Below, piece after piece: positions 31,432-63,184 of a stretch of DNA of 64,000 bases; position 1 is the first letter of the stretch; every line of letters begins with the position of its first letter. A program made the translations under genes and the position numbers. The notes below the pieces were generated by a model. It had not been told where the DNA came from. It was given only the letters and a program-made list of their open reading frames with translations, and did not search any database. The stretch is from Squalus acanthias (Eukaryota), in the NCBI GenBank assembly GCA_030390025.1, contig JASTWF010000810.1, forward strand, positions 1-64,000. Reading direction: 5' to 3'.

Positions 31432-31524
31432 TGAGAGGTCGCACAACACCAGGTTATAGTCCAACAGTTTTATTTGAAATCACAAGCTTTCGGAGCTATC
31501 GATTGCTCCTTCCTCAGGTGAAGT
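31432..31524 (-). mobile_element. 93-bp Penelope-like terminal fragment
   Basis: Flanked by a TAAGGT duplication (31426-31431, 31525-31530) inside the CR1 AFDKVPHKR codons; contains a hammerhead motif followed by AATAAA. Confidence 0.75.
31480..31521 (-). ncRNA. Minimal type I hammerhead ribozyme motif (Penelope-associated type)
   Basis: Minus strand TCAC-CTGAGGA-A-GGAGC-aatcgata-GCTCC-GAAA-GCTT-GTGA: stem I TCAC/GTGA, core CUGANGA..GAAA, 5-bp stem II, palindromic AAGCTT in place of stem III. Confidence 0.7.
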
Positions 31525-34440: not shown

Positions 34441-34797
34441 AACGGGTGATCTCACCACCTACAAGATTTAGATGAAATGTACAAATATGAGGCAGTACAC
34501 GGCACATTTGAACAATATCGTGACCTAAAACATCAGAAACATTTCAATTAATTGTTGCTATTTTAGTGCATTTACATTTAAGGTATAGTTTAATGAAACA
34601 AATTAAAAAGTGCTGAGCTATGTTTAATGTTTGCTTGAAGAACATTTGTTTCTACATTATCTTGCCGTAACCTGCTTTCTTGTTGATGTCAAACTGTGAT
34701 GTAAGCGTGTAATTGTAATTTGGACGATAGTGTATCGAAAGCCCGTTCTTACCACACTCCCGATTTTTATTTCCATTGACTTCAGTGTGATAATAAT

Positions 34798-35539
34798 GGC
34801 CCAAAAATGAGTGCCTCTACGCGAGAGTACGCACTGTGTACTCTCGCGTATTCTGTCTCCAATTGCCGGTTTTCTGCATGCACTGTGCATGCGCTGAAAA
34901 CCGGCACTTGGTGATTTCAAAAGGGGGCGGTTCCTAAGTGAACCGCGTGCGCGCTACAGGCTGCGCGCACGCAGTGCACTTAGTGCTTTGAACGCGCAGG
35001 TAAGCATGGAAGAATTTGCACATAAAGAAAGGAGGCGTAAGACCCTCTTTTAACAAGGTAAGTAGTTAATTAAGTATTATTTTGAATTTTTTTCAACAGG
35101 TATATCTTTTTTAGAGACTTTAAAGAAAGGTAAGTTTATTTTTATAACTTTTTAAAAGATTTTAAATTTTTTCAAAAATTTAATTTTTTGTTTAAAGTGG
35201 TTAATTTATTTAACTATACTTATTTTATTAATGTGATGGATTTTTTAAAATTTAATTGAGGTTTAGCTGTTCTTTTGGGGTCGTATAGATTCATAGCTTT
35301 CACAGCACTTGTTGTGAAAACTATGAATGAAAGATGGTGTGCTACCATTGGCTCTAACTGAATCACGTGATCCCACAGCTCGCACGAATTAACTGCGCCT
35401 GTGGGATACGCAAGCACTGCCCAGCTGCTGTCCAGAAAATCAAGTTCGTGCGAGCTGGGAATGAAAAAGCCGGCGCGCAGTGAGATATCGCGGGGAAGCC
35501 TTACCCCCGCACGAAGGCTCCCTCACTAATTTTTGGGCC
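34798..35539. mobile_element. Harbinger-type MITE, 742 bp
   Basis: 16-bp TIRs GGCCCAAAAAT(G/T)AGTG with one mismatch; 3-bp TSD AAT (34795-34797, 35540-35542). Confidence 0.8.
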
Positions 35540-38500: not shown

Positions 38501-39854
38501 CAGTAAAATCCACACTTAAAACAAAAAAAATAACTGCAGAACAGCAGAAAAACGACACGCGCTTCCCGGTTCTTCTTTATTCCATCAAAAACTATTTATC
38601 CTTTTTTCCTTCAATCAATTTTTAATTTCTGATGTTTTATACTGAATCCAATTCTGTACTGATTCAAAATTTCAAGCTCACATTCCTTGTCCTCGACCAA
38701 GCCTGTTACATCCTGCACAGCTCTTAAAACTTTCCTTTGGTACATGGGAGGGTTGCTATTACATAGATTAAAGGATGAAGGTGTAGGGTTTGATGAATCC
38801 ACATATGGCATTTTAACAATATCTCTGCGTTACTGATTTTTTGTTATTACTTACTTTGTAAAGATGTTAATATTATTTTTGTTAAGGCAACCGTAACTGC
38901 AAGGCATGATTAGAGGGCTGGGCCAAATATGCCAAGAGGTAGTTGCGCTAGTTTGATTTAAGTGTTGATAATATAGCATGCTGTAAACACCTGCGTTTGT
39001 AAATAATTTTCTGCTGAAGTGTGGTTCCGTGGAATCGGCATGCTTGATGCTGAGAGACATATTTTTCAAAGTTAACATTTGTGCAAGAACAATGGTAGAG
39101 GTAATAAGATACATCTGTACATGTTTACGAGAGTAAAAGGTCAGAGTATGCGATTGTGAAACTGCAGAGTTGCCAGAATCGAGTAGAACTGAAGAAAGTT
39201 GTGAACTTTGAGTCTCTTGCAAAAGCAGACAGCAGGAATCACCTGTACGGGGTGTACGTGCTGGGATATCAGGAGGCCACGGACGAACAAAATGGGAGCA
39301 TAATCCAATCATTTCGGCTGAAATGATTCATGACCTAATATGGTGAGGCACTAGCACTCCAAGGGGGATAAAAGAGAGAGATTACAGAACATCGGGGGCA
39401 AGCTTAGAGGAAGGAGATCGACTACGGTCAACAGAACACAGTAAGAAGCTTACAGAAGATCGTGCCCCAGAGAGCTTGGAAGCACAAACCGTCGGAGCCA
39501 AGACTCGCTGTATACCTATTGCCTTTGTTAAGTAATAATCTTTCATATCTTTGTGATACTCAATACATTCTTTGGCTTAATTAAAGAGCGTAAGTCGGTA
39601 TCTTGTAAGTCAAAATTGGTCAAGAGTCCGAGGTGAGGCGGGTTGGGTGTCCTCTGTCTCATAAACGTTATCATTTTGAGGGTTCTGCCTTACTGATAAC
39701 TTACAAAGGGAACGCTAAATATTCAGTCGAGAGTCCAATCTATATATCAAGGAACATTTTTGAAGCAATTTTTAAAATTATGTTTTAAAATTCTACGCAA
39801 TTGCGTTGGTTCATGGCATATTTTGCGATTGCCGATATTTCAAACATTTTTCTA

Positions 39855-40630
39855 AATGGCTGATCTTCTGCCTCAACTCCATTCACCGGCCCTATCGCCA
39901 TATCCCTTGATGCCCTTACTAGTGAGACTTCTATCGACTTCTGTTTTGAATATACCCAATGACAGAGCCTCCACAGCCCTCTGGGGTAGAGAATTCCATA
40001 GATTCACCACCATCTGTGTGAAGACATTTCTTGTCATCTCAGTCTTGAGTGGCCCACCCTTTATCCTGATGTTGTGGCCCCTGGTTCTATACTCCCCAGA
40101 CAAGGGATACATTCTCCCAGCATCCACCCTATCAAGCCCTGTAATAATTTTGTATGCTTCAAAGAGATCCCCTCTCATTCTTCTGAATTCAAGAGAATAC
40201 AGGCCGAGTTTACTCAATCTCTTCTCATACGACAGTTCTGCCATCCCAGGAATCAATCTCGTGAACCTTCGTTGCACTCCCTCTATGAGAAGTATATCCT
40301 TCCCTAAGGATGGTGACCAGAATTGTACACAGTACTCCAGGAGTGGTCTGACCAAGGCCCTATATAATTGGAGTCAGAGTTCCTTGCTCCTGTACTCAAA
40401 TCCTCTTGTAATGAAGGACAGCATATAATTTGCCTCTTTAATGGCTTGCTGCACCTTCACATTCACGTTCAGTGATTCATGTACAAGGACACCCAGGACC
40501 CTTTGAGCATCTGCATTCCCCAATCTTTCACCATTTAGCAAATACTCTGCCTTTCTGTTTTTTTCTACCAAAGTGTATAACTTCACATTTATCCACATTA
40601 TATTCCATCTGTCATGTTCTCGCCCACTCA
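39855..40630 (-). mobile_element. CR1 3' fragment
   Basis: ORF 39873-40355 VRPLLEYCVQFWSP..RTRGH..VNLWNSLPQ. Confidence 0.9.
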
Positions 40631-41729
40631 CTGTGGAGCTGTGCGCAATGTCGAGGCCGACGGATAAGCACACCTGCGATCACGTGGGACGGTGCGCCAA
40701 TCAGGAAAACGGAATCTCCGATGCTCATTCATGATTTTTTTATTGCTTTAGTTTAGCGGAGAAGATGTAAATATGCTGCTTGTGCGTCTAGGTTTCTTGT
40801 GTGCAAAAGTTTCGCTGCAGGGAAATTGCATTTCATTAATGGTTTGTTAAATTATTTCAAATCATGAAAGCCTCAGAGAATAGCCAGCTATGTCATCGGC
40901 ATTTCAAACAGTTAAGCATAAAATGTAGACACTTGTTCTTTGCCTTTTTTTTCTGCGGGTGAGCCAGTTTTGTGAAATGCATCGCAGTTTCGGCACAAGG
41001 GCAGCTTTTTCTCATAAAAGTACACTTGTAATCTCGGTCTGAAATGAGCTTTGGTAGTTCGTTTTCACCCTTTGCATATTTGTCTCGGCGGGCTGTGTTG
41101 GGATCAGTTGAAATAATTAGAAAGATGAGATATTAGTTAGCTGGATACAGATATTTATTTTGAAGATAATTTTTAATTACATTTTGGTCATTATGAAAAT
41201 AACTGTTGTATATTGCAAGCTGCTTCCTATCCCCATCCCTCCCCCGACGATCTGCAAACAGGCTGTTTCCACCAGTCGTAAAATTTTGCAGCATAATTGC
41301 TGGGCAGTTGGAGGGTAATTCGCCCAACTCTGCGCCAGCAATGAAGATTTGAGAGTCGCAGCGGATGATCTGTCATGTCGGAACTTGACAGATCGCAAGT
41401 TCGGGATTTAGCACATGCGCAAGCGCGTACAGAAATCCCCAAAGTTGCTGTCAATTTCAAAGGCGGTATTACTATGAACTCTGAGAGTTCATCGTCATAC
41501 TGACCACAAATTCTGCCCCAATAACTACAAATAAATACCTAGGAAATTACAGTGGAAATAAGTTTACACAGAAAAGTGATCAAAGGGTGGTAACAGAGTG
41601 AAGGATTTTGCAGAGTGAAGTGTGTGTCGACATAAGATATTAAATATATCCGGGCTAGATTAATTACTACTGCAAGTGAATACCCATTGAAACAAACACA
41701 TTTTTCAAAAATAACATTTTTAACATAGA

Positions 41730-42400
41730 ATTACATATACAGCACCGAAACAGGTCATTTAGTTGAATTGCTCTATGTCGATGTTTACAAGCCACACGAA
41801 CCTCCTGCCAATCGAATTGTCTGTTCTCACCCTGTTCCCATATCCCACAATATTCCCTCATGAATGCATAAACCTTACTTTAAATTGATCACTGATATCT
41901 GCCTCAGCCATTCTATATGGCGGTGAGTTCCACATTTTGAACACTATCTGAAAAATTAAATTACTTCCAAATTATTTATTTGACCTATTATTGGCTGTCT
42001 TAGAGTTGTGCTGCCGTTTCTGGACTAATTCACAAGTGGAACAAATTTTTCCACATCCAACCTATTGTTCCCCTACACCATTTTAAAGACCTCTATCAGG
42101 TCACTTCTTAGTCTACTGCGCTTGAGGAGCAAGGAGTCCGAGCCTGCACAATGTTTCCTGCTATTTGTATCCGCTCCATTCTGGGAACATCCTTGCAAAT
42201 CTTTACTGCACTTTCTCCAGTGGTTCAGTATCCATTTTGTAATGTGTCCACTAGAATTTTGCAGAGAACTTTAATGTGGTCTCGTCAAGGCCTATATAAA
42301 TTCAAAATTACCTCCCTGCTTTTGTATTCTATTTCTCTAGAAATGAACCCAATTACTTTGTTTGCAATCATTATTAACTTCTGAACTTGTATAGCTACTT
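41730..42400 (-). mobile_element. Old CR1-type 3' fragment
   Basis: Degenerate atagaattacatatacagcaccgaaacaggtcatt 3' end and RT C-terminal remnants. Confidence 0.55.
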
Positions 42401-43194
42401 CAAACGATTCCCAGAACTCTGTTTACTTTGTGTTTAGTCTTGGCTTGTCTCTAGCACTCTTGCCTCTGAGTCAGAACGTTCTCGTCCATATCCCATTCCA
42501 GACACTTTAGCACATAATCTAGGCTAACACACCAGTGCTGAAGGTATGCTGCACTGTCGGAATTGCTGAATTTTTCGTTTATGTGCTCCTTCTCCAGACG
42601 TTTTGTTGTCTCATTATTTAGCAAAGATTGTAGTCTATTTCCTACATCTGTCATTAAGACATCGCATTTTTCACAACATTTACTTTCAGTCAGTTTTTTT
42701 CAAAGTAACAGCGCATGCTATCATGTAGTGATGACTAGATAGTTGCAGATGTCATCGTTTTATACATTGCGACAGCACACGGTCCGTTTACATCTAAGTT
42801 GAGACTGAATCAACCTAGACTGATCCTCAGCGCCTCTCTATTCAGCCTTCGGTGAGAGTCTTGGACAGAATGTTCTTGGAGTAAGTTCACAGCAATTGTC
42901 GGATCACAACAAAAAATTGACAGTAAATTGGTAAACTCGTTGAAAGGACGCAAGGATGGTGGGTTCAGGAAATGCCAATGTCACAATTGTTCCTGGTGAT
43001 TTAGCGCGGCATATTTTGTATTAGTATAGAGGGAGCTCCACACTGACACCTATATCTGCCCTGGTACGTCGTGAATCTAATATGGGTGGCATAAATAGAC
43101 AAATAATTTTCGTTCTGCAGCACATTAATGTTTAAATGAAAATACCAAAGATTTATTTGTGGAACGCTAAATATTTTAAAGAATTATAAAACAA

Positions 43195-43430
43195 TAGTTC
43201 GGACCAACTGGAGTATCGTATTCATTTCTAGGCACCACACTTTAGGAAGGACGTGAAGGCTTTGCAGATGGTACAGAAAGATTTACTAGAATGTTTCCAG
43301 GGATGAGTAATTACACTTACGTGGATACACTACAGAAACTGTGGTTGTTCTCCTTAGAGCAGAGAAAGCTAAGAATAGATTGATAGAGATGTATAAAATC
43401 ATGAAGGGTTTAGATAGAGTAAATAAAGAT
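43195..43430 (+). mobile_element. CR1 fragment
   Basis: caactggagtat..caccacactttaggaagga..atttactagaatg remnants. Confidence 0.65.
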
Positions 43431-43433
43431 AAT

Positions 43434-44812
43434 GGGCTGGATATTACAATCCCTCCGGTTTTGTACGTGCTGTGTATAGGGATATCGGAAATGCCGGTTT
43501 CAGAATGCTCTTGACAGATCGGACGCCTGCTCTACAGAAGGGCCTATGCTGGCATATAGTTCCGTTTTCTGTAGAACCTCTGCCCACAGAAAACTCTTAG
43601 AAATCTTACTCCTGGTAAAAGCTGGCCTGCTTTTACCAGCATAAGATTTGAAAAAAGTATGAATAAAATGTTCCCCTCATTTATCATTTAAAAATAATTT
43701 TAAAAAGGGAAGTTTATTTTTAGCACGGTACAAAACTTTAATTATTCTTTTCAAAAAATTGCATTTTTTTCAAAATATTTAATTTATTGTAATTTCAACA
43801 AATTTTTAAAATGCGATGGTTGTTTTTTATTTATTTAATGTTTTACAGTGTTTTTGGGGTGATCTCCATTCATATATTTGAGAGTTCTGTCTGTCAAGTG
43901 TATGAAGGTAGATTCCTTTCTTTGGTTGACTCCCCATCGCCCACGTGATCCAAGGTACGCTTGCGAACCGCATGGGCCTCTGGGACACCTGGTCCCTGCA
44001 CATTTCAAGTTGGAGAGGCACAGGAGAGGAAGTGTCCGGACCTGGAAAGCCCTCAGTTAAGTCCATAGATTTTTTTCCAGATCGGAGGACTACGCACGCG
44101 GGACGCCTCCGATCAGAAAATACTTCCCAATTGCCCCACAATTTCCGATAGGTTGCTTCCTGCGTGCGGATGCCTCCTACCGGAAAAAAAAATCTAAGCC
44201 CTTACCTGAGGACTCCCGAGGTCCGTCCATTTCCGATCCTGGGACTCTCCACGATGAAATGCGCAGGGCCCAGATATCCCAGGGGTGCATGCGGTTCGCA
44301 AGCATCCTTGGGATCACGTGGGGCAGGCGAGCCAATGCGAGAAGGAAATCACCCTTCATACATTTTACAGATAGACCTATCAAAAGCATAAATGGGGATC
44401 ACCGAAAAAGACTTCAAAACATTAAATACATTTTAAAAAACTATCACGTTTTTAAAATGGGTTCAGATTAATTTAAATTAAATACTTTAAACAAAAATTT
44501 AATTTTTTGAAAAAAGTAATTAAAGTTTTTTACGCGGTTAAAATGAATTTACCTTTTTTGAAAGTATTTTAAAGTTATAATTAAGTGAAAAAAAATTAAT
44601 TATTTTAACTTTTTTTAAACACTTATGCTGGTAAAAACAGGCGTTACGCCTGCTTTTAACTGGCGTAAGATTTTTAATTGATTTCAGTGGGCGGAGGTTC
44701 TGCAGAAAGCGGAACACTCCCCCGCAGAGGCCCTTCTCCAGCGCAGGCGTCCGATCTCTCAAGAGGATTTTTGACAGATCGGAAATGCCGGTTTTCAGCG
44801 CATGCGTTCCGG
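43434..44812. mobile_element. Two abutting inverted MITE copies (43434-44128 and ~44132-44812)
   Basis: Arms are reverse-complement homologous (mirrored pseudo-ORFs LANRMGLWDTWSLHISSWR and LANRMHPWDIWALRISSWR); first copy flanked by AAT on both sides. Confidence 0.8.
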
Positions 44813-45539
44813 TTAAATAGGAGATCTCTTAAATAAGACTCTACCACTTGCTTTCACTGCAGTTTACACTTTAATAGTTGTCTCAATAAACAGGAAGTCA
44901 TAGAAGGATGTCTTAATGTTAATATAAACACACTGGAAATATTACTACTAACGAAAAATAAACGGTAGAAAGATCAGCATCTGAAAAAGAAAGCTAGTTT
45001 GAAGTCTCGGATGGAACGCCTCATAGGAGCATTGACGTCTGATCCGATTTTGGTTTTCTAACATTTTATTTTTAAATTTGAGATTGACAGAGCTGTTGGG
45101 TTGGAAGTATATATATATATATATATGTATATATTTAACAGGGCTAGATATAACCAGCAGGGTCCAGTTAAATTTTACAGCCAATATTATCATAATTTAG
45201 CTCTTTGTTCTGTTAGATCAGCCTAAGTTCTTTCCTTATTCTTTTGCCTCGACATCTTCTTATGCTTTTTGTTCTCTTTAGGTTTCCGTCTTTGGCTGCA
45301 ACCTCGGCCAATTAAAGCAGTCTATTTTCAATCTTCCCTCCAATGGTCTGTAAAATCGAAGCGTTTTACGGTTAGCTCATTACCTTGATTGGTCAGCAGA
45401 GTGATGCATGAAACAGATCTGAAAAGCAGCATAATTTTCTTCAACATTCAGTCACCAACTGAACTGTGCTCCGAATGTTTGCCTCAGACACGGTTTCAAT
45501 AGCATAAAAAGAAGTGTTTTATTGATATTTTTCCATCGA

Positions 45540-46170
45540 TACAGAAAGTTAACATGCAGGTACAGCAAACAATTAGTAAGGCAAACGGTATGTTAGCTTT
45601 TATTGCAAGGGAGTTGGAGTATAAGAGAAAGGAATATTGCTGCAAATATACAGGGCTTTAGTCAGATCACACCTGGGGTACTGTGTGCAGTTTTGGTCTC
45701 CTTACCTAAGGAAGGGTAGACTTGCCTTAGAGCAGTTGGAACTGAGGTTCACTAGATTGATTCCTTGGAGAATGGGCCTCTTTTGTCTTTAATTTAGAAG
45801 AATGAGAGGTGATCTCATTGAAAAGTATAAAGTTGTTAGAGGACTTAACACGGTACATGCTGAGAGGTTGTTTCCACTGGCTAGTGAGTCTAGAACCTGG
45901 GGTCACAGTCTCATGATAAGGGGTCAGCCATTTCAGACTGAGATGAGGAGGAATTTCCTCAATCACAAAGTCAATCTTTGGAGTTCTCTACTCCAGAGGC
46001 CTGTAGATGCTCATTCGATATGTTTTTGGACTTTATGGGAATCAAGGGATATGGGGATAGGGCGGCAAAATGGATTTGATGTCGAAGATTAGCCTTGAAT
46101 TTATTGAATGGTGGAGCAGGCTCCAGAGGCCTCATGGCCTCTGCCTTATCCTATTTCTTATATTCTTATG
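45540..46170 (+). mobile_element. CR1 3' fragment
   Basis: MRGDLIE..SRTWGHSL..EMRRNF..NLWSSL; CR1 3' UTR with ttcttat tail. Confidence 0.88.
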
Positions 46171-46469
46171 AGAACACGAGGACTAGCTGACGCAGTGACT
46201 TCGTGCTTTGGGATCTGAGATTTGAGTGTAGCCTGCACTGACAGATTATTCTCCATTACTTGGCCCGTCTCAATCTAACTCTTCGTTTTCTGCTTTACAG
46301 CAGCAAATGTGCAATGAATTAAAAATCGACATTGATGGATTAGCAGTCTCACTCAGAGAAGCCAGTGATTAGTTGGCGGGAGAGTGGGGAGAAAATCGCA
46401 TGATCCAATTGCAGTGTTTTTCATAAGGAAGAGCTTCAGGCAATTCATTGGAACAGAGTAATGGAATAT

Positions 46470-47185
46470 CACTTTGTATCTAACCGTACTGCACTGCCAC
46501 AGTGCAAGCTAAATGGACCAGGGCCAAGGAAGTTCTGCTATATATCTAACCAGTGCTGTAACTCCATTCAGAGTGTTTGATGGTCAGTGTTTAGCGAGAT
46601 TGACTCTGTATCTATCCCGTGGCGTAACTGCAATGGCAGTGTTTGATGGGACAATTTAGAAGGAGCTTTACTCTGTATGTAACCCAACTTCACTAGACCT
46701 GGGAATGTTTTATGGGACAGTGTAGAGGGAGCTTTACTTTGTTTCTTACGCATGCTGTACCTGCCCTGTGAGTGTTTGAATGGACAGAATACAGGGAGCT
46801 TTTCTCTGTATCCAAAGCATGCTGTACCTCCTTTGGGACTGATTCTTTGATGGGACATTGTTTACGGAGCTTTACTCTGTATCTAACCCGTGCTCTCCCT
46901 GCGATTGGTGTGTTTGTTGGATTAGGGTAGAGGAAGCTTTACTCTGTATCTCTCCCGTGCTGTACCTGCCCTGGGAGTGTTTGATGGGACAGTGTAGACT
47001 GAGCTTTACTCTTTATGTAACCCTTGCTTTACCAGTCCTGGGCATGTAGAGGGAGCTTCACTATATCTAAACCATGCTGCAACGACACATGGAATGTTTG
47101 ATGGGACAGTGTAGAAGGAGCTTTACTCTCGATGTAACCCAACTGCACTAGACCTGTAGGTGTTTGACGGAGCAGTGTAGAGGGT
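46470..47185. repeat. Degenerate minisatellite, ~66-67-bp unit, about 10 copies
   Basis: Recurrent gtgtttgatgggacagtgtagagggagctttactctgtat.taacc at 46573, 46639, 46705, 46772 and onward. Confidence 0.9.
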
Positions 47186-47412
47186 ACTTAGGTCAGCATG
47201 CACACCATTCTGTAATTGACTGGAGATGTTTGAAGCAGGGAATGGGGCTGATGGTGATTGGTTTATTTCGTATGATGGCCACTCGTGCATATAATCATTT
47301 ACCAATATACACGTAAAAATAGCCGTATATATAACATTATTATATATGCTTAGTACAGCATTGCATTATTTTACGCTTTCAACATTTTCGAAAATTCAGT
47401 AGAAAAACCCAC

Positions 47413-47456
47413 CCGTTCTTCTAAGTGGCGAGGACCCTCTTCGTTTACGCGTGCGC
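47413..47456 (-). CDS. IgSF VJ-C1 receptor exon 5, first cytoplasmic exon (GARVNEEGPRHLEER)
   Basis: Acceptor ttgtatttcactAG, donor CGG|GTGGGT; 44 nt, phase 1 to 0, open in frame with the TM exon. Confidence 0.65.
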
Positions 47457-47914
47457 CTAGTGAAATACAACATCAAAGTTTGACCAGACAGCAAGACGTG
47501 AACAACCGAAATCCGACTTAGTTTCAGCCAATAACGCCTTAAGGATCATAGTTGATGAAACGTTTTGAAAATGTATTCGCAACTCTCCCCCCGCCCCCTT
47601 GGTTGAACGATCTAGATGTAACGTTCCTGAAATGCCTTCGGCTCATAACACAGGGAATCAATGATTCAAAACAACAAAACAACACCAGAAAATTGCAAAC
47701 ATCGGTACTCATTTATCAGTTACTTTAAGTTCATTTGCATGAATCTTGGGCAAATCTTTTTCTTCCAGACTGTTGAATCAATTATTACTTTACAACATAT
47801 CAACATAATTCCCTTCCTGGACCAGATATAACGTTCCTTCCTTTGCTCGGCGTCATGTTCATCCCTTTTTTATTACAAATCTTTCACAGTGAAACTACAT
47901 AGGTGGCTCATTAC

Positions 47915-48028
47915 CTTTACAGTTACTGAGTTGGTAACTCTTCCCAATGAAAGTGATGATGGCTAGAATTATCAGTGCACCACCTGCACATCCAGCAATT
48001 AGTAGGGGAAGGGATGGGAGTCCTTTGC
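47915..48028 (-). CDS. IgSF VJ-C1 receptor exon 4, transmembrane (GKGLPSLPLLIAGCAGGALIILAIITFIGKSYQLSNCK)
   Basis: Acceptor attttAG, donor AAG|GTAATG; 114 nt, phase 1-1; long uncharged hydrophobic stretch. Confidence 0.85.
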
Positions 48029-48230
48029 CTAAAATCATAATCACAATACAAATAATCATCATAATATTGCTATTACTGATAATAGTAATAATCAATCACC
48101 AGCTCTTCATTATCGGCAGTATTATGCAAACAGTCTTTTGAACATATGTTAGTTCTCCCATTTACATTTTGCGTGTCTCCACAGCAGAGCCGAGGACTGA
48201 GACTGTTAACTGTGCAAACTGGTTTACATC

Positions 48231-48322
48231 TATATATATATATATATATATACATAAAGACAGATAGATGGATAGAGAGAGAGAGAGAGAGATAGATAGA
48301 AAGATAGATAGAGAGATAGATA
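48231..48322. repeat. Compound microsatellite (TA)n/(GA)n/(GATA)n in intron 3
   Basis: Directly visible. Confidence 0.9.
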
Positions 48323-48869
48323 TAATATTTTTAGTCATTCTTATTTTCCTCTCAGCGGAATCCTGCACATAAATTGTTTGCATTACTGGATTAAAATGTA
48401 ACTTTTGAATTTTCATTGACACGACAATAATGAACTTGGTAGCTAAAAAGATTATAGCGCAAATTACAGACGCACCATTCATTCTCGGGTGGTATCTCAC
48501 GAAGAGTTGGGCAGTTGACATAGGGAACTGATCTGGATCGGCAGGTTCTCAATAACGTAAAATACTTAAATATATGAGAAAAACACATTCTACGAACTTT
48601 CTCTCGCTGTTAAATGGCGAGCAATTGAATCTGGTGAAGATTAGTATAATTCAGTTGATCATTATAATTTTTGTAGATTAAACTCCATTTCTCGGATGGC
48701 AGACGTTTGTCTCTTATATCCGTTTCACAAATCAGCAAATAGAATTAATCTTTGAATGACCATTCTGAAAAATTAATTGTACATCTGAAACAAAAAATGA
48801 TTGACAGCAAATAAGGCCGATTTAAAGTGCTCAGTGGATGCCAGTATTGCACAAATGTCAACATCTTAC

Positions 48870-49178
48870 CTGGGTTGGAACTGGAATCAAAGTAAACAGC
48901 CACGGCTGGACTCTGCAGTGTGAGGTGAGACACCACACAGGTATATACAGCCCCGCTCTGGGCTGGCTGTGTCGTCTGCAATCTGCTGGAAGCTTCATAC
49001 ATTCCCTCCGAATTCTGCTTTATAATGGTGTTGATCCCAGTCACAATGTTGGTGTTATTTTTATACCAAGTGAAGCTGAGAGCCTCCGGGTAGAAGTCGG
49101 CCGTTTCACACACAAGTGTTAGAGTAGATGGGTCGGTTCCGGACACTTTGGGATCCAGTCTCACGGGTTCTGGTGAAA
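48870..49178 (-). CDS. IgSF VJ-C1 receptor exon 3, C1-set Ig domain
   Basis: Acceptor ccctcttccacAG, donor CAG|GTAAGA; 309 nt, phase 1-1; C1 signatures LVCETADFYP, FTWYKN, YEASSRL, YTCVVSH. Confidence 0.93.
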
Positions 49179-50264
49179 CTGTGGAAGAGGGTCAAGAATA
49201 CACTGATTGCCCAGACTTTGGTATTTTAGTTCCGTTTGGCGTCCAGCCTTCCTGAATATGATACGATGATTCCAATTCGCATTTTGGTTACTTAACAATT
49301 CGAAATAAGATTCTTCCCATAACTTTCTAGGCTAATATGCGGACGCTGCAGAAGCTTGTTGCAGGAACAGGAGAAAGCAATTCAGTGCGACTAGACATTC
49401 AGGCCGTCGCCGCTTTGCGCTTAGTCCAGGCAAAAAAATATATTTATATTTCAACTGAGCAACTTTTTGCTCAGTTTTGTTATTAGGCAGGTTTAAATCA
49501 ATAGGCAAAACTTATTTCAAACAACTCGCGTTAGGATTTGTAAATGTGGAACACAGGGGAAAATTATTGCCGTCCAGAGAAGCGATACATAGATCCCGGG
49601 ATACTTTGTAAGTGCAGGAAAAATAATTGTGTCCAAAATTTAAAGAGAAAAAGCCCAACTTGCTGGATATTTAATTAAAATGGAATGGCGGGAATTGAGG
49701 GTTGAGGGGATCATCCTTGGAGAAGTATGAGGGAAGTGGCTGAAAATCCAGACTCTTTCATAGTGGCACATAGAAAGCCTAACATTAGACTGGAAATATA
49801 TTATCACCGTCAAGAACCGCCCCCCCCCCCCCCAAACCCCACCTCACCCCCGCCATTCGTACTTGTTAAAGTTACAATTTAAATTGAGAGTTATGATCTG
49901 ACCACAGTTCGTTCACGGAGAAGCGCGTGAGATTCCACAGACTGGGTTCGACTCTCATGCAGTATAATTCCCGACTAGTATCAAATCTAGTTTGCGAAAC
50001 TGATCAAAGTATCCCTTAGACCAAATTGTAAACTTACCAGGAGTTTATTCAAATGTAAATAGATTGTACTCGCTCCGTCACCGTTCTCTAAATATTTAAC
50101 GATTTATGTACAAAACTCTTCCCGGACAAAGGACTCGTCTGTCACACTTTGCAGTATTTCGTGTCAGTATTGATACAGTTACAGCTCAGTCGTCCACTCA
50201 CTGAGTTGAGTTCAAACCGATAGGGTTTTACATACAGATTATTTGTACAATTGGACTACCAGAA

Positions 50265-50790
50265 TCTTTGAAGGTGGCAGAACAAGCATATGGTGCCCAT
50301 GGCTTTATAAACAGAGACATAGAGTACAAAAGCAAGGATGCTCAGTTAAACGTGTATACATCACTGGTTAGGACTCATCTGGAGTATTGTGTCCATTCTG
50401 GGCACAACGTTGTAGGAAGGATGTCAAGGCCTTGGAGAGGGTGCAGAAGAGATTTACTAGAATGATACCAGGGACGAGGGTCTTCAGTTGCATGGAGATA
50501 CTGGAGAAGCTGGAATTGTTGTGCTTAGAGTAGAGAAAGTTAAGGGGAGATGTATTAAGGAGTGCAAAATGATGAGAGGCTTTGAGTTAGTAAATACACA
50601 GAAACCCTTTCCAGTGGCAGATGGGCACAGATTTAAGATAATTGCGAGATGTGTAGAATGCTTTTTTGCACAGCGAGTTTTTATGATTTGGATTGAACTG
50701 CCTGAAAGGCTGGTGGATGCAGATTCAGTCGTAACTTTCAAAACGGAATTTGGATATATACTTAAAAAGGAAAGTTTGCTTAGTCCCATG
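50265..50790 (+). mobile_element. Old CR1 3' fragment in intron 2
   Basis: IEYKSKD..YTSLVRTHLEYCV..QRVFMIW remnants. Confidence 0.8.
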
Positions 50791-51123
50791 GCACTTTTGT
50801 GCTAGATTTTCACATAGGATTCAAGGTGCGCCCCTACCAATATCTTGTACAAACTTATTTCTTCTTTATCGATAGCCAGTAAATCAAGGTCCCTATTTCT
50901 GCCACATACTTTGGATTCAGATTCTTCTTCTGTATATTGTCCTGGAGCCCAGAGATACTTAACATATCGTGATATGATTTTGGGGCTGATTTTAAATAAT
51001 GTTCCCTAATCATCTCCCATAAACTAGCTGTAGTGGTCAATTCATTAAATAATCAAAAAAGTGCGATACTATATACACTGTCATACAATAGCAGCGACCG
51101 CAACTTTCTCCAAGGTCGCTTAC

Positions 51124-51435
51124 CGTGCACATCAAGCTTCGATCCGGCTCCTTTTATCATCGGGTTACCTGTGTATCTCACTCCACAGTAATAGGATCCG
51201 GAGTCTGGGAAACGGACACTCAGGATCTGGAAGGAAGCCTCTCCGTTTTTCAAAGGAAAGAATCGTTTCCTGCCGTCAGAATCTGGTTGTATGAAGTGAT
51301 TGTCGCCAAGTCTCCACCAATAAACATTCACATCTGAATTATTCTGGACAGAGCTGGTCTTGCAATGGAAGGTAATGTCTGCACCTGCCATCACACTGGT
51401 GCTTTCAGGGCTTTGGGAAACTGCAGCGGAAGCAA
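51124..51435 (-). CDS. IgSF VJ-C1 receptor exon 2, V-set domain with built-in J-like G strand
   Basis: Acceptor ttttgttttAG, donor ACG|GTAAGC; 312 nt, phase 1-1; VSQSP, TFHC, VYWW, ASFQI, DSGSYYC, KGAGSKLDV. Confidence 0.93.
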
Positions 51436-51579
51436 CTAAAACAAAATAAACATTAATCACAAAATAGAGATAAAAGATAGGCACGAATAGACAGCTCGCT
51501 AAATATGTCTATATAGAGATCGATAAAAAATTAAAAAAGCAAGCAAGAAAGTAAAATATTCGATTATAATGGAAAATAC

Positions 51580-51625
51580 CTTTGTAAATAACCCCAAGCG
51601 CCCATATGTAGTGACACACAAACAT
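51580..51625 (-). CDS. IgSF VJ-C1 receptor exon 1, leader (MFVCHYIWALGVIYK)
   Basis: ATG at 51625 in acaATG context; 46 nt ending AAG|GTATTT, phase 1; 144-nt intron to the V exon; splices to give ..GVIYKVASA-AVSQSP, a plausible signal peptide. Confidence 0.75.
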
Positions 51626-53351
51626 TGTTCAATGGAAATTGTTCTGCCACTGAACCGCGGCTCGGATGGTTTGGAAATATCAGTTTGTAGATAATCCGAT
51701 AAGATTTGTGATTTGACGAGATGTCATATCGCGTGCCTAAAACTGTTTCCGATAATCTATTTTAAGAGGCGAGCTGTGAACGTAAATGTCAGTTAATGTG
51801 CGTGAGCACCTCATCTTAACAGGATCTGCAATCTGCAGTTAAACCAAAGCCCCATTGGTCGGCCTGCACGTGGTTTATCTCAATGACGTAACATTAAAGA
51901 AGTGACCGGTAACAACACGTTGATGAAACTCCCTGATTAGGCAGAAACAATTTATATTATATAGAAGTTACAGAAAGGAAGGGGTGCGGGAAGACGGGTG
52001 GGATGGGAGGGTTGCATTGCCAATTACAGAAGGTCGGAAAGTTTGAGAAAGAAGATATTTTGAGCTGAGTCTGCTGCAAATAATTTGGCCCCTAACCCGT
52101 CAATATTTCCTTCCTCGGTCTTTATTATCCATTGCTGATGGGTTCGGAGCAGGAATCCGGTGATGCCGCAGATTTCCAAAGGCTGTGGCCCGGTAAAGAC
52201 GGTAATCGGAGGATGGATTCTAGTCTTCGTGTCGGCGTTACTTCAGGGCAGGACTTCCATCCGCCCCTCCAAACCCACTCCGATCCGGAATCATTTCTTT
52301 CTAGTCGGCCTTCTTCTGATAGGCACGGCAGCTCCCGTCAAAGCGAGAAGTGATCGACTGCTGAGCCTTGAGAGTAGGACGTCCCAGAGGAGGGTAGTTC
52401 AGGCAGTTTACAGGGAGGCTGCTGACGAAGTCTGTGCAACCACGCCACCCAAGAACTACAGGAAGAGATTAATTGTACCACAGATAGAACTTTCACTCAT
52501 CTCATTGCCTCATATTGTTTCCCTCGGATGACCTGGGTGTTAGGATAACTCACGCATGCAAACGAAAACATTTTCAAGTACTCAAGCAACATCTAAACTA
52601 AGAAACACTCTGTCCAATCACATAGCATGCTGCAGGAATTCTTCAGAGACAATTTCTTAAAATGCCTAATTCCCCTGCACCTCACAGTGTCATGTGATGC
52701 CTGCACTCATACTGGGGAAAACAAGGACCCCTACCACTGATCTTTTAACATTATATTAAGTTCTCACGAAGGATGAAAGGAAGAAGACAATCGCCAAGCG
52801 GGTATTCGCTCTGTAATGTACTGACCAATGTGTCTGAATCTGTTCCCGCCAAAAGGGGGATGAATGTAAGGGACACACATGCCGCAACTCCAAATAGTGG
52901 TAATGGAAGTGCTTCAGTAATGTCCCATCCTATCTCTGTGCATGATAGAATTTCAGACATGGGCCCTCCATCCTCTAAAACAGAAAGGCTGCCGGAAGCT
53001 GGTCCCTCTGGAAGATTTGGATCACTCAGATGCTTGTTATTTCAGGCTTCAAGGGTTCTAGCAGATCCGATTTAGCCACCCAATCCTCGCCACCAGCCAT
53101 CTCAGTCATGGAGCACCTTTTGGATGTAGCAGCCTAGGAGTTCGAGAACATAAGTCGGCTGGCATAAAGGGTAAACATGGCATTACGAAGCAGTTGTAGA
53201 CATCCTGGACTTTCCATTGTTTTTTCGTTTGACTGTCCAACCCAGTCCTATTCTAAACGTTGCCTGAGACGTGTGTCGGATATTGCGTCACATAATAGGT
53301 TAACAACCCGGAATAGGGAAAATAGCATCACGGGTTAATTGGTATGAGGAT

Positions 53352-55110: not shown

Positions 55111-57840
55111 GTCAGGGCCCTCCCCCGTGTCAATTCCATTTCCCGCACTTCTACCCTTAATCCTTCTCCTCCCCCCCAGAACCATGAAAGGGTTCCCGTC
55201 ATTCTCACTTCCCACCCCACCAGCTTCCAATTTCAGTGGATCATACTCCACCATTTCCACCACATCCAGCCAATGCCGCCACCAAACACATGTTCCCCTC
55301 CCATTCCATCCCGTTTCAGCATTCTGGAGGGATACCCTAGTCCACTCTTCAATCAGCCCAACACCGCTCCCCTTCCCACGGCACCTTCCCATGCATGCGC
55401 AGCTGATGGAATGCCTGCCCTTTTACATCCTTCCTTCTCACAGTCGAGAGCCCTAAATACACCTTCCAGGTGAAACAGTGATTTACATGTACTACTTTTA
55501 ATTTAATATACAGTATTCGCTGCTCATGCTACAGTCTCCTGTACATTGAGGAGCCCAACCGCATATTGGGAGATTGCTTTTTTGAGCACCTCGGTTCATT
55601 CTGCAATTGTGACCCTGAGCTTCCGGTCGCTTGTCATTTTAATTCTCGGTCCCACACCCACTTTGACCTCTCCGTCCTCGGCCTCCTACACTGTTCTAAT
55701 GAAGCTCGAGGAAGAACATCTCTTTCGATTAAGTACTTTAAGCCTTCAGGTCTCAACATTGAGATCAACAATTTCAGATCATAACCACCGCTCTCATTTT
55801 TTGGAGAGAAGCTGTTTGTAATGATTCTGCTAAGGGCCATTTACAACTCCTCTGGACCCATCTTCTGTTTCTTTACTTGTTCCTTTACCACCCCCGTATG
55901 CCTTCCAGCATCATCCCTTTTATCATTTATTCATTGCTGCCTTCCACTCTATCACAAACATTCCCTATTTGTTCTTTCGTCCCCTCCCGCTTTCCTTGCC
56001 TCCGTACTTACTTAAACGGTATTATATCTCTAACCTTTGCCGGATCTGACGAAAAAATAACATAAGAACATAAGAAATAGGAGCAGGAGTAGGCATTCGG
56101 TCCATCGAGACTGCTCTGCCATTCAATAAGATCATGGCTGATCTTCTAACTCAACTCCACTTTCCTGCACTATCCCCATATCCCTCGAATCCCCTACTAT
56201 CCGAAAATCTATGGATCTCTGTCTTGAATATATTCAACGACTGAGCCTCCACAGCCCTCTGGGGTAGAAAATTACAAAGATTCACCACCCTCTGAGTGAA
56301 GAAATGTCCCCACATCTCAGCCCTAAATGACCGACTCATTATTCTGAGACTGTGAACTCTGGTTCTGGACTCCCCAGCCAGGGGAACTATCCCCCCTGCA
56401 TTTAACCTGTCAAGCCCTGTAAGAACGTTTTATGTTTCAAGGAGATCACCTCTAATTCTTCTAAACTCTAGAGCATATTGATCTAGTCTACTCCATCTCT
56501 CATCATAGGACAATCTCCACAACCCACGAATCAGTCTGGTGAAACTTTGATGCACTCCTTCTATGCCAAGTATATCCTTCCTTCGGTAAGGAGACCAAAA
56601 CTGTACTCAATACGCCAGGTGTGGTCTTACCAAGGTCCAACATATAATTGGATTAAGACGTCTTTAATCTTATACTCAAATCCTCTTGTAATAAAGGCCA
56701 ACAAACCATTTCCTAATTGCTTGCTGTACCTGCATGTTAACTTTCAGTGATTCATGTACAAGGACACCCAGTTCCCTCTGAACACCAACATTTCCCAATC
56801 TCTCACCATTTGAATAATAATCTGCTTTTCTATTTCACTTACCAAAGTGCATAACTTCACATTTCTCCAAGTTATATTCCATTTGCCATGTTCTTGCCCA
56901 CTCACTTAGCATGTCTATATCCCCTTGAAGCCTCTTTGCATCCTCCTCACAATTTACATTCCAACCCAGCTTTGTATCATCAGCAAATTTGGATATATTA
57001 CATTTGGTCCCCTCATCTAGATTGTACATAGCTGAGGACCAAGCACTGATCCTTGCGGCACACATTACAGCCTGCCAATCCGTAAATGATCCGTTTATTC
57101 CTATTCTCTGTTTTCTCTCCGTTAACCAATCCTGAATCCATGCTAGTATATTAACCCCAATCCCAAGAGCCCTAATTTTGTTTAATAACCTCTTGTGTGG
57201 CAGCTTATAGAATGCCTTCTGAAAATCCAAAAACACCACATCCCCTGGGTCCCCCTTATCTATTCTGCTAGTTGCAAACTCAAAAAACTCTAACAGATTT
57301 GTCAAACATGATTTCCCTTTCATAAATCCGTGTTGAATCTGCCCAATCCTATTATTATTTTCTAAGTGCCCTGCTACCACCTCCTTAATGATAGATTCCA
57401 GCATTTTCCCTGCTACTGATGTCAGGCTCACTGTTCTGTAGTTCCCCATTTTCTCTCTCCCTCTTTTCTTAAATAGTGCGTTTACATTTGCTACCTTCCA
57501 AACCGTGGAAAACGTTCTAGAATCTATGGAATTTTGAAAGATGGCAACCAATGCATTCATTATCTCTATAGCCACCTCATTCAAAACCCGAGCATGTAGG
57601 CCATCAGCTGCAGGGGATTTATCGGCTTTCAGGCCCATTATTTTCTCAATTACTATTTTTTTTGCTAATATTAATTTCTTTCAGTTCCTCATTCTCGCTA
57701 GACCCTTGGTACTCCAGTATTTCCGAGAGGATTTTTGCGTCTTCTTCCATAAAGAGTCAACGACCTGAAAATTTAACTCCGTTTTTCTCTGGACAGGTGC
57801 TGTTAACCTGCTGAGAATTTCGAGCTTTATTTGTTTTTAT
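55110..57840 (+). mobile_element. Penelope-like element 3' part (GIY-YIG remnant and terminal repeat), split by a CR1 insertion
   Basis: RALPRVNSISRTS..RVPVILTSHPTS; FTCTT.NLIYSIRCSC..LYIEE..GDCFFEHL..LPVACHFNS..PSGLNIEINNF; terminal segment resumes at ~57755. Confidence 0.8.
56058..57754 (-). mobile_element. 5'-truncated CR1 LINE
   Basis: (aacataag)n tail at ~56058-56075; RT ORF 56835-57638 (QHGF, FLDFQKAF, KFADDTKLG). Confidence 0.93.
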
Positions 57841-62045: not shown

Positions 62046-63022
62046 CAACCAACTGATTCCCTGTTCACTGAGATTAATTTTATTCCTTGAACCCAATCCA
62101 ATCCCTATGGCCAGAATTCAATATAAAGGAAAATCGAGTGCAAACCTGTTGTCTATTCTCTAGCGCCCATTTTGCGCTATCGCTCAAGACGAATTTATAC
62201 CCGATGAAGATTAAATGCACATTCCTATTAATTTTCAAATAACTCAAGTTACTGATACTTGAGCGATCACGGTGTTGTGATTAAGGATTTATCTATCAAT
62301 CGTGAAAACGCTTTAAATCCAACATTTTCCAAAGCTGCATAGAATTCAAGCAGCACAAAACAGCAACTACGAAATAGAAGTCCGAACACGAATCGGTTGC
62401 CTGGCCTTTGAACGGCTGGGACCTGTTAGAGCAAAGCTTGGGCGGCGTGTCAGTGGGTTTTTAGAATCTATTTCATCTGCAGCTTCAAAAATAAGGCGAA
62501 TGGGGCAGACAGACAGGAGCCCGCTTCTAATTCATGCTGGACGTTAGTTGCTAACTATTTCTAAACTGGGGCTCCCCACCCTTCTTCTAAGAATAGTTGC
62601 AATTATTTTCCCAGTTACTGATGTTAGGTTAATGAGCATCTAGTTAGTTAAACACAAATAAAACGGGTTCCGCATTGGCGCAAATATTACTTGGCTTTTC
62701 CTTCCGTTAAAATAACGTCTGCTCTTTGATTTTTCATCTGTAGCTGAGCATACTCCGTGCTCTTATCCTTAAAATTAGGGTTTGCTGTTTTCTTCGAGCC
62801 TGTCATGTCGAGAGCAGCGTAGGTCAACTTATTATCAGGCCCCCTTTGCTTGGTCTGTGAAATCAATATTTGGAAATATCATTACTTCGACATTGTACTT
62901 GTTTATAGTCTAATATTTAGCAATTTCATTGGAATAGCTGGATCCTCGCAGAAATAGCGAGGATATAAATGATGAATTAAATATAAAAGATTACCATAGT
63001 ACTATTCAAGGTCTTTCTTACA

Positions 63023-63184
63023 CTATCCTGCATGCCCATTAATTACAGTTAATCTTTGTCTCTTTGTTCTGCTCCCCAGCCCTACCTGGGCATACACTGT
63101 CCTCTCTTGATGCTTTGGTCTTGGACCTTTCCGGGACTTGGTCAGATCTAATGTGGCATAAGGCGTCATCACTTCGGCTGGTCC
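63023..63184 (-). CDS. Terminal cytoplasmic exon with two ITIM/ITSM-like motifs, from an immune receptor gene lying beyond the window end
   Basis: Strong acceptor ttttgcccttcctcccatgcAG; phase 0 reads GPAEVMTPYATLDLTKSRKGPRPKHQERTVYAQVGLGSRTKRQRLTVINGHAG*; TPYATL and TVYAQV with tyrosines 21 residues apart. A CAG|GTAGGG site after YAQ could be an alternative end. Confidence 0.7.
   Translation of the reverse strand, partial: GPAEVMTPYATLDLTKSRKGPRPKHQERTVYAQVGLGSRTKRQRLTVINGHAG

What the first reader, a model, noticed from the sequence alone, without database searches (positions are those of the whole stretch)
47413..51625. Intact non-rearranging antigen-receptor-like gene: leader-VJ-C1-TM-cytoplasmic
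Seen: five minus-strand exons (51625-51580, 51435-51124, 49178-48870, 48028-47915, 47456-47413) with GT-AG borders and compatible phases give an unbroken 275-aa product. The V domain carries its J-like strand (KGAGSKLDV; compare FGxGTxLxV) in the same exon, and the next domain is C1-set (FYP, YxCxVxH). Known: C1-set domains are largely restricted to TCR/Ig/MHC, tapasin, SIRP and some B7-family proteins. Germline-joined VJ domains occur in NKp30, NITR, PRARP and SIRP-type receptors, which are discussed as models of the pre-RAG antigen receptor. Inference: this is a TCR/IgL-shaped but germline-fixed type I membrane receptor of a cartilaginous fish. It is probably only auto-annotated, and I cannot assign it to a named gene.
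Basis: partly seen in the sequence, partly recalled or inferred. Interest (0 to 1): 0.85.

Follow-up and report, generated by a model that had tools for sequence, protein, structure and literature searches.

The report
Shark SIRP-like VJ-C1 membrane receptor
This is an intact shark gene for a surface receptor shaped like one T-cell-receptor or antibody light chain but fixed in the germline, and it belongs to a large, so far unnamed, SIRP-like family of paired immune receptors found in sharks, rays and chimaeras.

Summary
One 849-nt transcript contig, about 93% identical, joins exons 1 to 4 at these borders. A letter-identical contig spans the exon 1-2 junction. Exon 2 is a V-set domain with its J strand in the same exon. 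Exon 3 is C1-set. Models and fold searches agree.

Correction: the 275 codons carry no stop. The frame runs on to TAA at 47373-47371, with AATAAA at 47267. The 3' end has no RNA support.

The gene belongs to a multigene family seen here only in cartilaginous fish. All 56 profile hits come from there, under seven kinds of automatic name, 22 of them SIRP-type. Relatives carry SIRP-alpha-like tyrosine tails, a transmembrane arginine, or neither. This gene sits in a short-tailed, motif-less clade shared by sharks and rays. An inhibitory-tailed paralogue ends 11 kb upstream.

It is not IgL, UrIg or single-V NKp30. SIRP membership is unproven. I found no paper on the family, but key papers were not held. 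The scan noted similar genes elsewhere in this genome.

The parts
51580..51690 (-). Exon 1: at least 65 nt of 5' UTR (51690-51626), then ATG at 51625 and most of the signal peptide (46 coding nt, phase 1 donor). This is the split leader.
   Evidence: The X1 contig covers 51690-51580 and joins to 51435. The X2 contig is identical across this junction.
51124..51435 (-). Exon 2: end of the leader plus a V-set domain with the J-like G strand (GAGSKLDV) in the same exon.
   Evidence: Pfam V-set 9.1e-11. The AF2 model has pLDDT 91.7. Family-invariant residues Q7, P9, G17, C24, W39, G79, C83 and the G95-x-G97...V102 motif are kept. No RSS.
48870..49178 (-). Exon 3: a single C1-set domain (FYP, YTCVVSH).
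   Evidence: Pfam C1-set 1.4e-13. The AF2 model has pLDDT 85.3. The best Foldseek matches are MHC class II beta2 domains, TM 0.78-0.83. It is joined to exons 2 and 4 in the X1 contig.
47915..48028 (-). Exon 4: stalk, a transmembrane helix (LPLLIAGCAGGALIILAIITFIG) with no charged residue, and the juxtamembrane stretch KSYQLSNCK.
   Evidence: It matches P0156 at 73% over 30 residues. It is joined to exon 3 in the X1 contig.
47371..47456 (-). Exon 5: a short cytoplasmic tail. The frame reads on to TAA at 47373-47371 (288-aa model). There is no tyrosine motif.
   Evidence: No RNA support. Inferred.
47262..47267 (-). AATAAA, about 104 nt after the read-through stop. Candidate polyadenylation signal.
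   Evidence: Inferred.
62687..63184 (-). The last two coding exons of the upstream tandem paralogue. They carry four tyrosine motifs (TPYATL, TVYAQV, LTYAAL, TEYAQL) and a stop. The rest of that gene lies beyond the window.
   Evidence: tblastn to the tails of P0004, P0162, P0013 and P0019 gives E 1e-9 to 1e-10.

Best explanation
This is an intact, spliced, non-rearranging gene for a type I membrane protein. The parts in order are a split leader, a VJ-type V domain, one C1-set domain, an uncharged transmembrane helix and a short tail without signalling motifs. It is the short-tailed member of a multigene family of paired immune receptors found across cartilaginous fish. Sister genes have the same ectodomain but end either in SIRP-alpha-like ITIM/ITSM tails (inhibitory, presumably recruiting SH2 phosphatases) or in a transmembrane arginine with a short tail (activating, presumably through an adaptor). 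The most likely mechanism (inferred) is as follows. The V domain binds a cell-surface ligand. This copy cannot signal on its own, so it acts as an adhesion, decoy or co-receptor form, much like mammalian SIRP-gamma. It would tune the inhibitory neighbour that ends 11 kb upstream. Shown here: the gene structure, the domain types, splicing of exons 1-4, the family, the clade and the absence of motifs. Inferred: the 3' end, the ligand, the lack of signalling and the cell type.
For: Structure and frames. Domains. Splicing. Family: the V exon against 1.84 billion representatives gave 278 hits with E<=1e-3. Of the best 150 listed, 78 of the 93 that are 520 aa or shorter also match this C1 exon. All 20 proteins whose sources I looked up are from sharks, rays or a chimaera. 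The profile search gave 56 of 56 hits from chondrichthyans, 22 of them with SIRP-type automatic names. Closest relatives are P0155 and P0001 (Heterodontus) and P0156 (Heptranchias), at 72-75% in V and 78% in C1. In the trees the window V sits in an 8-row clade (SH-aLRT 99) and the window C1 in the same 8 rows (88; 9 rows at 98). That clade holds sharks plus a sawfish and a skate, all with short tails. Signalling classes over 85 family proteins: 24 have two or more Tyr motifs, 6 have one, 19 have a TM R/K, 17 are neutral and short, and 19 have no TM or are partial. The window TM has no charge and the tail has no [SIVLTA]xYxx[ILV] motif. No ITIM-like exon was found in the 17 kb downstream. The SIRP alpha/beta/gamma design is described in passages of PMC12975943.
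Against: The 849-nt spliced contig is only about 93% identical, so it may come from a paralogue. For this exact locus only the exon 1-2 junction is shown, and the runs are only guessed to be RNA. Exon 5 and the stop are not covered by reads, so a further 3' exon outside the 17 kb I scanned cannot be excluded. SIRP kinship is not demonstrated. Among solved structures the family profile scores SIRP-alpha (103 bits) about the same as Ig lambda chains (88-97 bits). The V model's best Foldseek match is NKp30, not SIRP (rank 50), although the top rows are near-tied. There is one C1 domain, not the two of SIRPs. The tail search found only the query itself. The likeness of the tyrosine tails to human SIRP-alpha rests on my recall of the human motifs. 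'No signalling' is an argument from absence. A TM cysteine and small-residue motifs could mediate pairing with a signalling partner.
Confidence: 0.7

Rival explanations
1. It is a member of the published shark NCR3 (NKp30) family, that is an NKp30 homologue that kept a C1 domain.
For: The best Foldseek match of the V model is human NKp30, 3noi (E 1.5e-8, TMq 0.76, 23-25% identity). Database isoforms of family genes skip the C1 exon and are V-TM, which is the NKp30 layout (P0137 against P0138). Nurse shark NCR3 is a multigene family (accession list in PMC12227049).
Against: The Foldseek and VIA rows are ties with vNAR, TCR V, VL and PD-1 (Z 14.4-15.0). None of the 76 names I saw says NCR3 or NKp30 receptor; five say 'NCR3 ligand 1-like'. 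PMC12227049 treats NCR3 as a VJ-domain gene and uses it only in the V trees. The defining paper (Kinlein 2021) was not held, so this rival is not closed.
Confidence: 0.1
2. It does signal, but through a partner. It would pair through its transmembrane or stalk region with an adaptor or with a tailed paralogue, as a TCR chain does with CD3.
For: The chain has the TCR layout (V-C1-TM-short tail). There is a cysteine at the outer edge of the TM (AGCAGG) and small-residue motifs. About 10 of 17 aligned family members have a Cys in this column.
Against: The TM has no basic residue, unlike the 19 TM-R/K family members. The TM Cys is replaced by Tyr in the Mustelus and Scyliorhinus orthologues, so it is not essential. 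No dimer model could be run.
Confidence: 0.12
3. It is a B7-family ligand (B7H6/CD276-like, V + C) rather than a receptor.
For: Automatic names include 'NCR3 ligand 1-like' (5 of 56) and 'CD276 antigen homolog' (3 of 56). CD276 chains are among the better PDB matches of the C1 exon. Pfam C2-set_3 scores 1.1e-4.
Against: C1-set scores 1.4e-13 against C2-set_3 at 1.1e-4 and C2-set_2 at 0.037. The V domain has a conserved GxG...LxV J strand. That B7 V domains lack this strand is my recall, not tested here. Sister genes carry ITIM/ITSM tails or a TM arginine, which are receptor designs.
Confidence: 0.05
4. It is a germline-joined Ig light chain or TCR-like antigen-receptor gene.
For: The best PDB sequence matches of the V exon are VL domains (E 1.6e-6 and weaker). 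Automatic names include 'immunoglobulin lambda-1 light chain-like'.
Against: A TM exon is spliced directly after the single C exon. The per-domain match to Ig lambda C (28 bits) is no better than to UrIg2 C domains (20-28 bits). The gene has orthologues in at least 6 species with the same membrane-bound layout. The TM has no basic residues. The PDB is dominated by antibodies, which favours VL as the top hit.
Confidence: 0.03

Closest known systems
SIRP family (SIRP-alpha/beta/gamma; PTPNS1/SHPS-1)
   Same: Both have a non-rearranging V domain with a J-like strand, followed by C1-set domain(s), a TM and a tail. Both are paired-receptor sets with an ITIM-tailed, a TM-charged and a short-tailed form. 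Of the automatic names, 22 of 56 are SIRP-type. SIRP-alpha (103 bits) and SIRP-gamma (95 bits) are among the best two-domain PDB matches. The four-tyrosine tails of the relatives and of the neighbour resemble the human SIRP-alpha tail in order and wording (human motifs recalled).
   Different: This family has one C1 domain, not two. The activating forms have arginine rather than lysine in the TM (the mammalian residue is recalled). No sequence or synteny evidence yet separates SIRP from IgL-like or UrIg-like kinship. The ligand is unknown.
UrIg and UrIg2 (elasmobranch non-rearranging Ig; PMC12227049)
   Same: Both have a single-exon VJ domain with a split leader, followed by C1-type domains, in elasmobranchs. 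UrIg2 (9dmx) is the top PDB hit of the C1 exon by whole-sequence score.
   Different: UrIg has three C domains and is secreted. Nurse shark UrIg2 has nine C domains. This gene has one. The UrIg2 score is the sum of three domains of 20-28 bits each, no better than Ig lambda C.
NKp30 (NCR3)
   Same: Both have a germline VJ-type V domain on a membrane receptor. NKp30 is the best Foldseek match of the V model. C1-skipping isoforms of family genes have the NKp30 layout.
   Different: NKp30 has no C domain. Identity is 23-25%, and the match ties with many other V domains.
TCR and Ig light chains
   Same: The chain layout is leader-V(J)-C1, and for TCR also TM plus a short tail. VL domains are the best PDB sequence matches of the V exon.
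   Different: There is no separate V and J and no RSS. The TM has no basic residues. FR2 reads YWWRLG in place of the WYQQ-type motif of antibody V domains (the antibody motif is recalled).
PRARP (chicken and other non-rearranging VJ genes, Fu et al. 2019)
   Same: Both are non-rearranging VJ membrane proteins discussed as remnants of the antigen-receptor precursor (mention and reference entry in PMC10751288).
   Different: PRARPs are V or V-C2 with an ITIM, by my recall of the abstract; I did not read the paper. Here the second domain is C1-set.

Membership tests
SIRP family | N-terminal V-set domain, germline-encoded, with a J-like G strand | tested here: met
   Pfam V-set 9.1e-11. The GxG...LxV motif is conserved in 50 aligned sequences. 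Single exon and no RSS.
SIRP family | [quoted passage not shown] | tested here: not met
   There is only one C1 exon between V and TM. The X1 contig joins V-C1-TM directly. The window holds no second C1-like exon.
SIRP family | A paired set of ITIM-tailed, TM-charged and short-tailed forms with similar ectodomains | tested here: met
   (24 / 19 / 17 of 85 family proteins, crude rules). This gene is the short-tailed form without motifs. The neighbour has four Tyr motifs.
SIRP family | Closer in sequence to SIRPs than to other V-C1 proteins | tested here: inconclusive
   Family profile against the PDB: SIRP-alpha 103 bits, SIRP-gamma 95, Ig lambda chains 88-97, UrIg2 120.7. SIRP-alpha D1 is rank 50 in Foldseek. 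No tetrapod SIRP sequence was available for a tree.
SIRP family | Conserved synteny with the tetrapod SIRP cluster; binding to CD47 | not testable with these tools
Apart from this gene and the neighbour's tail, the window holds only retroelement and transposase fragments among the 10 large ORFs I scanned.
Rearranging Ig/TCR | Separate V and J segments flanked by recombination signal sequences | tested here: not met
   V and J are in one open exon. No nonamer occurs in 47000-52000. The one heptamer-like site (47891, in intron 4) has no nonamer.
Rearranging Ig/TCR | For TCR: basic residues in the TM. For IgL: a secreted chain without a TM | tested here: not met
   The TM is uncharged, and the TM exon is spliced on.
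UrIg / UrIg2 | A VJ exon with split leader, followed by three or more C1-type domains (PMC12227049) | tested here: not met
   The VJ exon and split leader are present, but there is only one C exon.
NKp30 / NCR3 | A single V domain followed directly by stalk and TM, with no C domain | tested here: not met
   A C1-set exon is present and spliced between V and TM.
NKp30 / NCR3 | Specific V-domain kinship; MHC linkage | tested here: inconclusive
   3noi is the top Foldseek hit but ties with other V domains. Linkage was not testable. Kinlein 2021 was not held.
B7 family | A V domain plus a C2-type or B7-type C domain | tested here: not met
   C1-set 1.4e-13 against C2-set_3 at 1.1e-4 and C2-set_2 at 0.037. 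The C1 model matches MHC II beta2 domains best.

The most novel reading that the evidence does not exclude
This chondrichthyan VJ-C1-TM family, and not only the multi-C-domain UrIg genes, may be the surviving membrane-bound form of the pre-RAG antigen-receptor chain. It has one germline VJ domain, one C1 domain, a TM and a short tail, as in a TCR chain. Tetrapod SIRPs would be its descendants after duplication of the C1 exon. The short-tailed clade, conserved from sharks to rays, would then be the nearest living model of an unrearranged TCR-like chain.
Probability: 0.15. Interest if true: 0.85.

Novelty: new variant of a known kind. Interest (0 to 1): 0.6.

Why it matters
The introduction of PMC12227049 says that germline single-exon VJ genes are actively sought as clues to how Ig and TCR arose. 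In the papers I could read, the cartilaginous-fish examples are UrIg, UrIg2 and NCR3. A whole family of VJ-C1-TM receptors, present in sharks, rays and a chimaera, has the exact chain layout of a TCR or light chain plus SIRP-like signalling variants. It would add a membrane-bound comparator at the base of the jawed vertebrates. It would also push the SIRP-type paired-receptor design back to the origin of gnathostomes. The family can be tested directly through synteny with the MHC and its paralogues, trees with SIRP/NKp30/AgR domains, and assays of ligand and dimer state. It is tempered by two facts. The mechanism is a familiar one, and homologues are already in public annotations, although under inconsistent automatic names.

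Tried and rejected
Germline-joined IgL: rejected. A TM exon is spliced on, the C domain is no closer to Ig lambda C than to UrIg2 C domains, and membrane-bound orthologues exist.

UrIg/UrIg2 membership: rejected on domain number.

Tapasin or TAPBPL, despite 11 of 56 automatic names: rejected. The V domain starts right after the leader, so there is no N-terminal tapasin domain.

MHC class II beta, despite 2 of 56 names and the top C1 fold matches: only the C1 fold is shared.

Hidden ITIM exons downstream: none in 30000-47915 by motif scan. None by tblastn with 11 relatives' tails, nor with all 197 stored proteins.

Searches that led nowhere:
- The tail-only homology search found only the query.
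- The Atlas tail search gave no usable hit.
- The Atlas whole-protein search gave near-equal IgL-like, SIRP, B7 and BTN clusters.
- VIA-align gave ties at Z 14.4-15.0.

Literature searches:
- 'PRARP' gave no immunology hit among the 10 rows listed of 106.
- SIRP + shark + C1 domain + nonrearranging gave 3 papers, none on this family.
- SIRP + Callorhinchus + immunoglobulin superfamily gave 0.
- signal regulatory protein + shark + CD47 gave 91 papers; none of the 15 listed was relevant.
- The paired-receptor search gave nothing relevant among the 12 rows listed of 14.
- 'VJ-C1' occurs, in the antigen-receptor sense, only in PMC10751288 among the 7 papers listed.

Those of PMC12227049 and PMC10751288 may list such genes.


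Full report
**The observation**

Each is preceded by a polypyrimidine tract plus AG and followed by GT. All introns are phase 1. Exon 1 (51625-51580) encodes MFVCHYIWALGVIYK plus one base, a split leader.

Exon 2 (51435-51124) is a V-set domain (Pfam 9.1e-11). Its G strand, GAGSKLDV, lies in the same exon. Exon 3 (49178-48870) is C1-set (1.4e-13) with FYP and YTCVVSH. Exon 4 (48028-47915) encodes a stalk and an uncharged transmembrane helix.

AlphaFold models built exon by exon are confident, with pLDDT 91.7 for V and 85.3 for C1. The C1 model matches MHC class II beta2 domains best, a classical C1 fold. The V model matches V-type domains.

**Correction**

After 47413 there is a GT, but the frame also reads on to TAA at 47373-47371. 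An AATAAA follows at 47267. I therefore prefer a 288-aa read-through model, but this is inferred.

The first 14 codons of the exon resemble the same position in the chimaera protein P0162 (7 of 14, E 0.003). BLASTP found nothing against the closest full-length relative, P0156. tblastn without composition correction gave 11 of 26.

**RNA**

Laid on 47300-51700, one 849-nt contig of X1 joins 51690-51580 | 51435-51124 | 49177-48869 | 48027-47914. The contig differs at 61 of 846 letters, so it comes from a paralogue, an allele or a related species.

A 203-nt contig of X2 has no difference and crosses intron 1. An X4 contig with 16 differences crosses it too. The X1 contig stops two letters after exon 4, so exon 5 is untested. 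All four runs pile up deeply on 50240-50830, which is a repeat in intron 2.

**No rearrangement**

There is no nonamer in 47000-52000. The single heptamer-like site is in intron 4.

**What it belongs to**

The V exon was scored against 1.84 billion cluster representatives and gave 278 hits at E<=1e-3. Of the best 150 listed, 93 are 520 aa or shorter. Of those, 78 also match this C1 exon in a local BLAST. The remainder of the list are giant multi-Ig proteins.

I looked up sources for 20 proteins, and all are from sharks, rays or a chimaera. A profile of 18 family proteins then found 56 proteins, all chondrichthyan by their names. Two of the names are cut off, with gi numbers next to Callorhinchus entries.

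The automatic names are a medley:
- 19 PTPNS1 (SIRP-alpha)-like
- 3 SIRP-beta-1-like
- 11 tapasin-related-like
- 5 Ig lambda-like
- 5 NCR3-ligand-1-like
- 3 CD276 homologues
- 2 MHC class II beta-like
- 8 unnamed

That search sees only proteins that share exact words with the query, so the absence of bony-vertebrate hits proves nothing. Within each species the hits sit on records of one length, which suggests one chromosome.

**This gene's place in the family**

The closest proteins are P0155 and P0001 (Heterodontus) and P0156 (Heptranchias). They are 72-75% identical in V and 78% in C1. No hit is identical, so the window's own species is not among them.

In quick maximum-likelihood trees of 86 rows, the window V falls in an 8-row clade (SH-aLRT 99). 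That clade holds proteins of Heptranchias, Heterodontus (two), Mustelus, Scyliorhinus canicula, Pristis and Leucoraja. The window C1 falls with the same rows (88; 98 when P0161 is added). All have short tails. The window keeps every invariant and near-invariant family residue. V is less conserved than C1, for example 48% against 61% to the skate.

**Signalling designs**

I applied crude automatic rules to 85 family proteins:
- 24 have two or more [SIVLTA]xYxx[ILV] motifs in the tail.
- 6 have one.
- 19 have R or K in the TM, many as RF[IV]L...D/E-H with a short tail.
- 17 are neutral and short.
- 19 lack a TM or are partial.

The long tails read like xxYAxL ... TxYAQ ... LTYAxL ... xEYAxL. As far as I recall the human sequence, that is the order and wording of the four SIRP-alpha tyrosines.

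The window gene has no TM charge and no such motif. No ITIM-like exon lies in the 17 kb downstream. Eleven kb upstream, at 63184-62687, lie the last two exons of a tandem paralogue with TPYATL, TVYAQV, LTYAAL and TEYAQL. The rest of the window is retroelement and transposase debris.

**Comparison with known families**

SIRPs are V + two C1 domains, with alpha (ITIM), beta (TM charge, DAP12) and gamma (very short tail) forms (passages of PMC12975943). This family shares the design but has one C1. Its profile scores SIRP-alpha (103 bits) no better than Ig lambda chains (88-97 bits) in the PDB. Membership therefore stays open, and I call the family SIRP-like.

UrIg and UrIg2 have three or more C domains (sections 4 and 7 of PMC12227049). 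NKp30 has none. Its top Foldseek rank (E 1.5e-8) is a near-tie with vNAR, TCR, VL and PD-1.

PMC10751288 calls UrIg a 'novel nonrearranging (VJ-C1)' gene of elasmobranchs. It says that several VJ-C1-type genes are known in tetrapods (passages).

**In print?**

I found no paper on this family in the searches. However, Kinlein 2021, Flajnik 2012 and 2023, Ohta 2019 and Ohta & Flajnik 2015 were not held, and supplements were closed.

**Earlier notes of this scan**

Unchecked first-reader notes flag the neighbour's tail and similar SIRP-like VJ-C1 genes on other pieces of this genome. They also place NKp30-like single-V genes on a piece that one note assigns to the MHC class III region.

**Verdict**

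This is a real, intact gene, and the finding is interesting but not unprecedented. It is the short-tailed member of a SIRP-like VJ-C1-TM paired-receptor family of cartilaginous fish that has, as far as I could find, not been described. All tests were done exon by exon or with database relatives.

Noticed in passing
window 62687-63184 (minus strand): The last two coding exons of a tandem paralogue carry four tyrosine motifs (TPYATL, TVYAQV, LTYAAL, TEYAQL) and a stop. The V, C1 and TM exons must lie beyond the window's end.
   Followed up: partly
window 50240-50830 (intron 2): A repeat is covered at summed contig depths of hundreds to tens of thousands in all four runs, with many loose ends. 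It is probably an abundant, transcribed interspersed element.
   Followed up: no
P0137 against P0138, also P0083, P0080, P0128, P0103: Predicted isoforms of family genes go from V straight to TM without the C1 exon, which gives an NKp30-like V-TM layout. SIRPs also have D1-only splice variants.
   Followed up: partly
window 51136-51150; relatives in alignment A1: The family J strand is usually N-G-T-G-S-x-L-V-V, which includes an N-glycosylation sequon. This gene has K-G-A-G-S-K-L-D-V and has lost the sequon. The skate orthologue also has K at the first position.
   Followed up: no
window 1366-2223, 2955-3596, 5452-6123, 7310-7966, 13798-14610, 33291-34376, 56835-57638; 27204-28001: ORFs with LINE-type endonuclease or reverse-transcriptase matches, and one with a DDE_Tnp_4 transposase match. 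No other host gene was seen in the 10 large ORFs scanned.
   Followed up: partly
P0006 residues 1-170: The Heterodontus model named 'tapasin-related protein-like' has an N-terminal part that matches retroelement ORFs in this window. It is probably a gene-model fusion with a transposon.
   Followed up: no
window 48220-48327 and 49820-49850: A CT/TA microsatellite lies in intron 3, where read laying skipped repeats. A long G run lies in intron 2.
   Followed up: no
window 49527-49781: A 255-nt X1 contig is identical to intron 2, while the spliced X1 contig is only about 93% identical. This hints that organism A may be the window's species and that the spliced contig comes from a paralogue.
   Followed up: no
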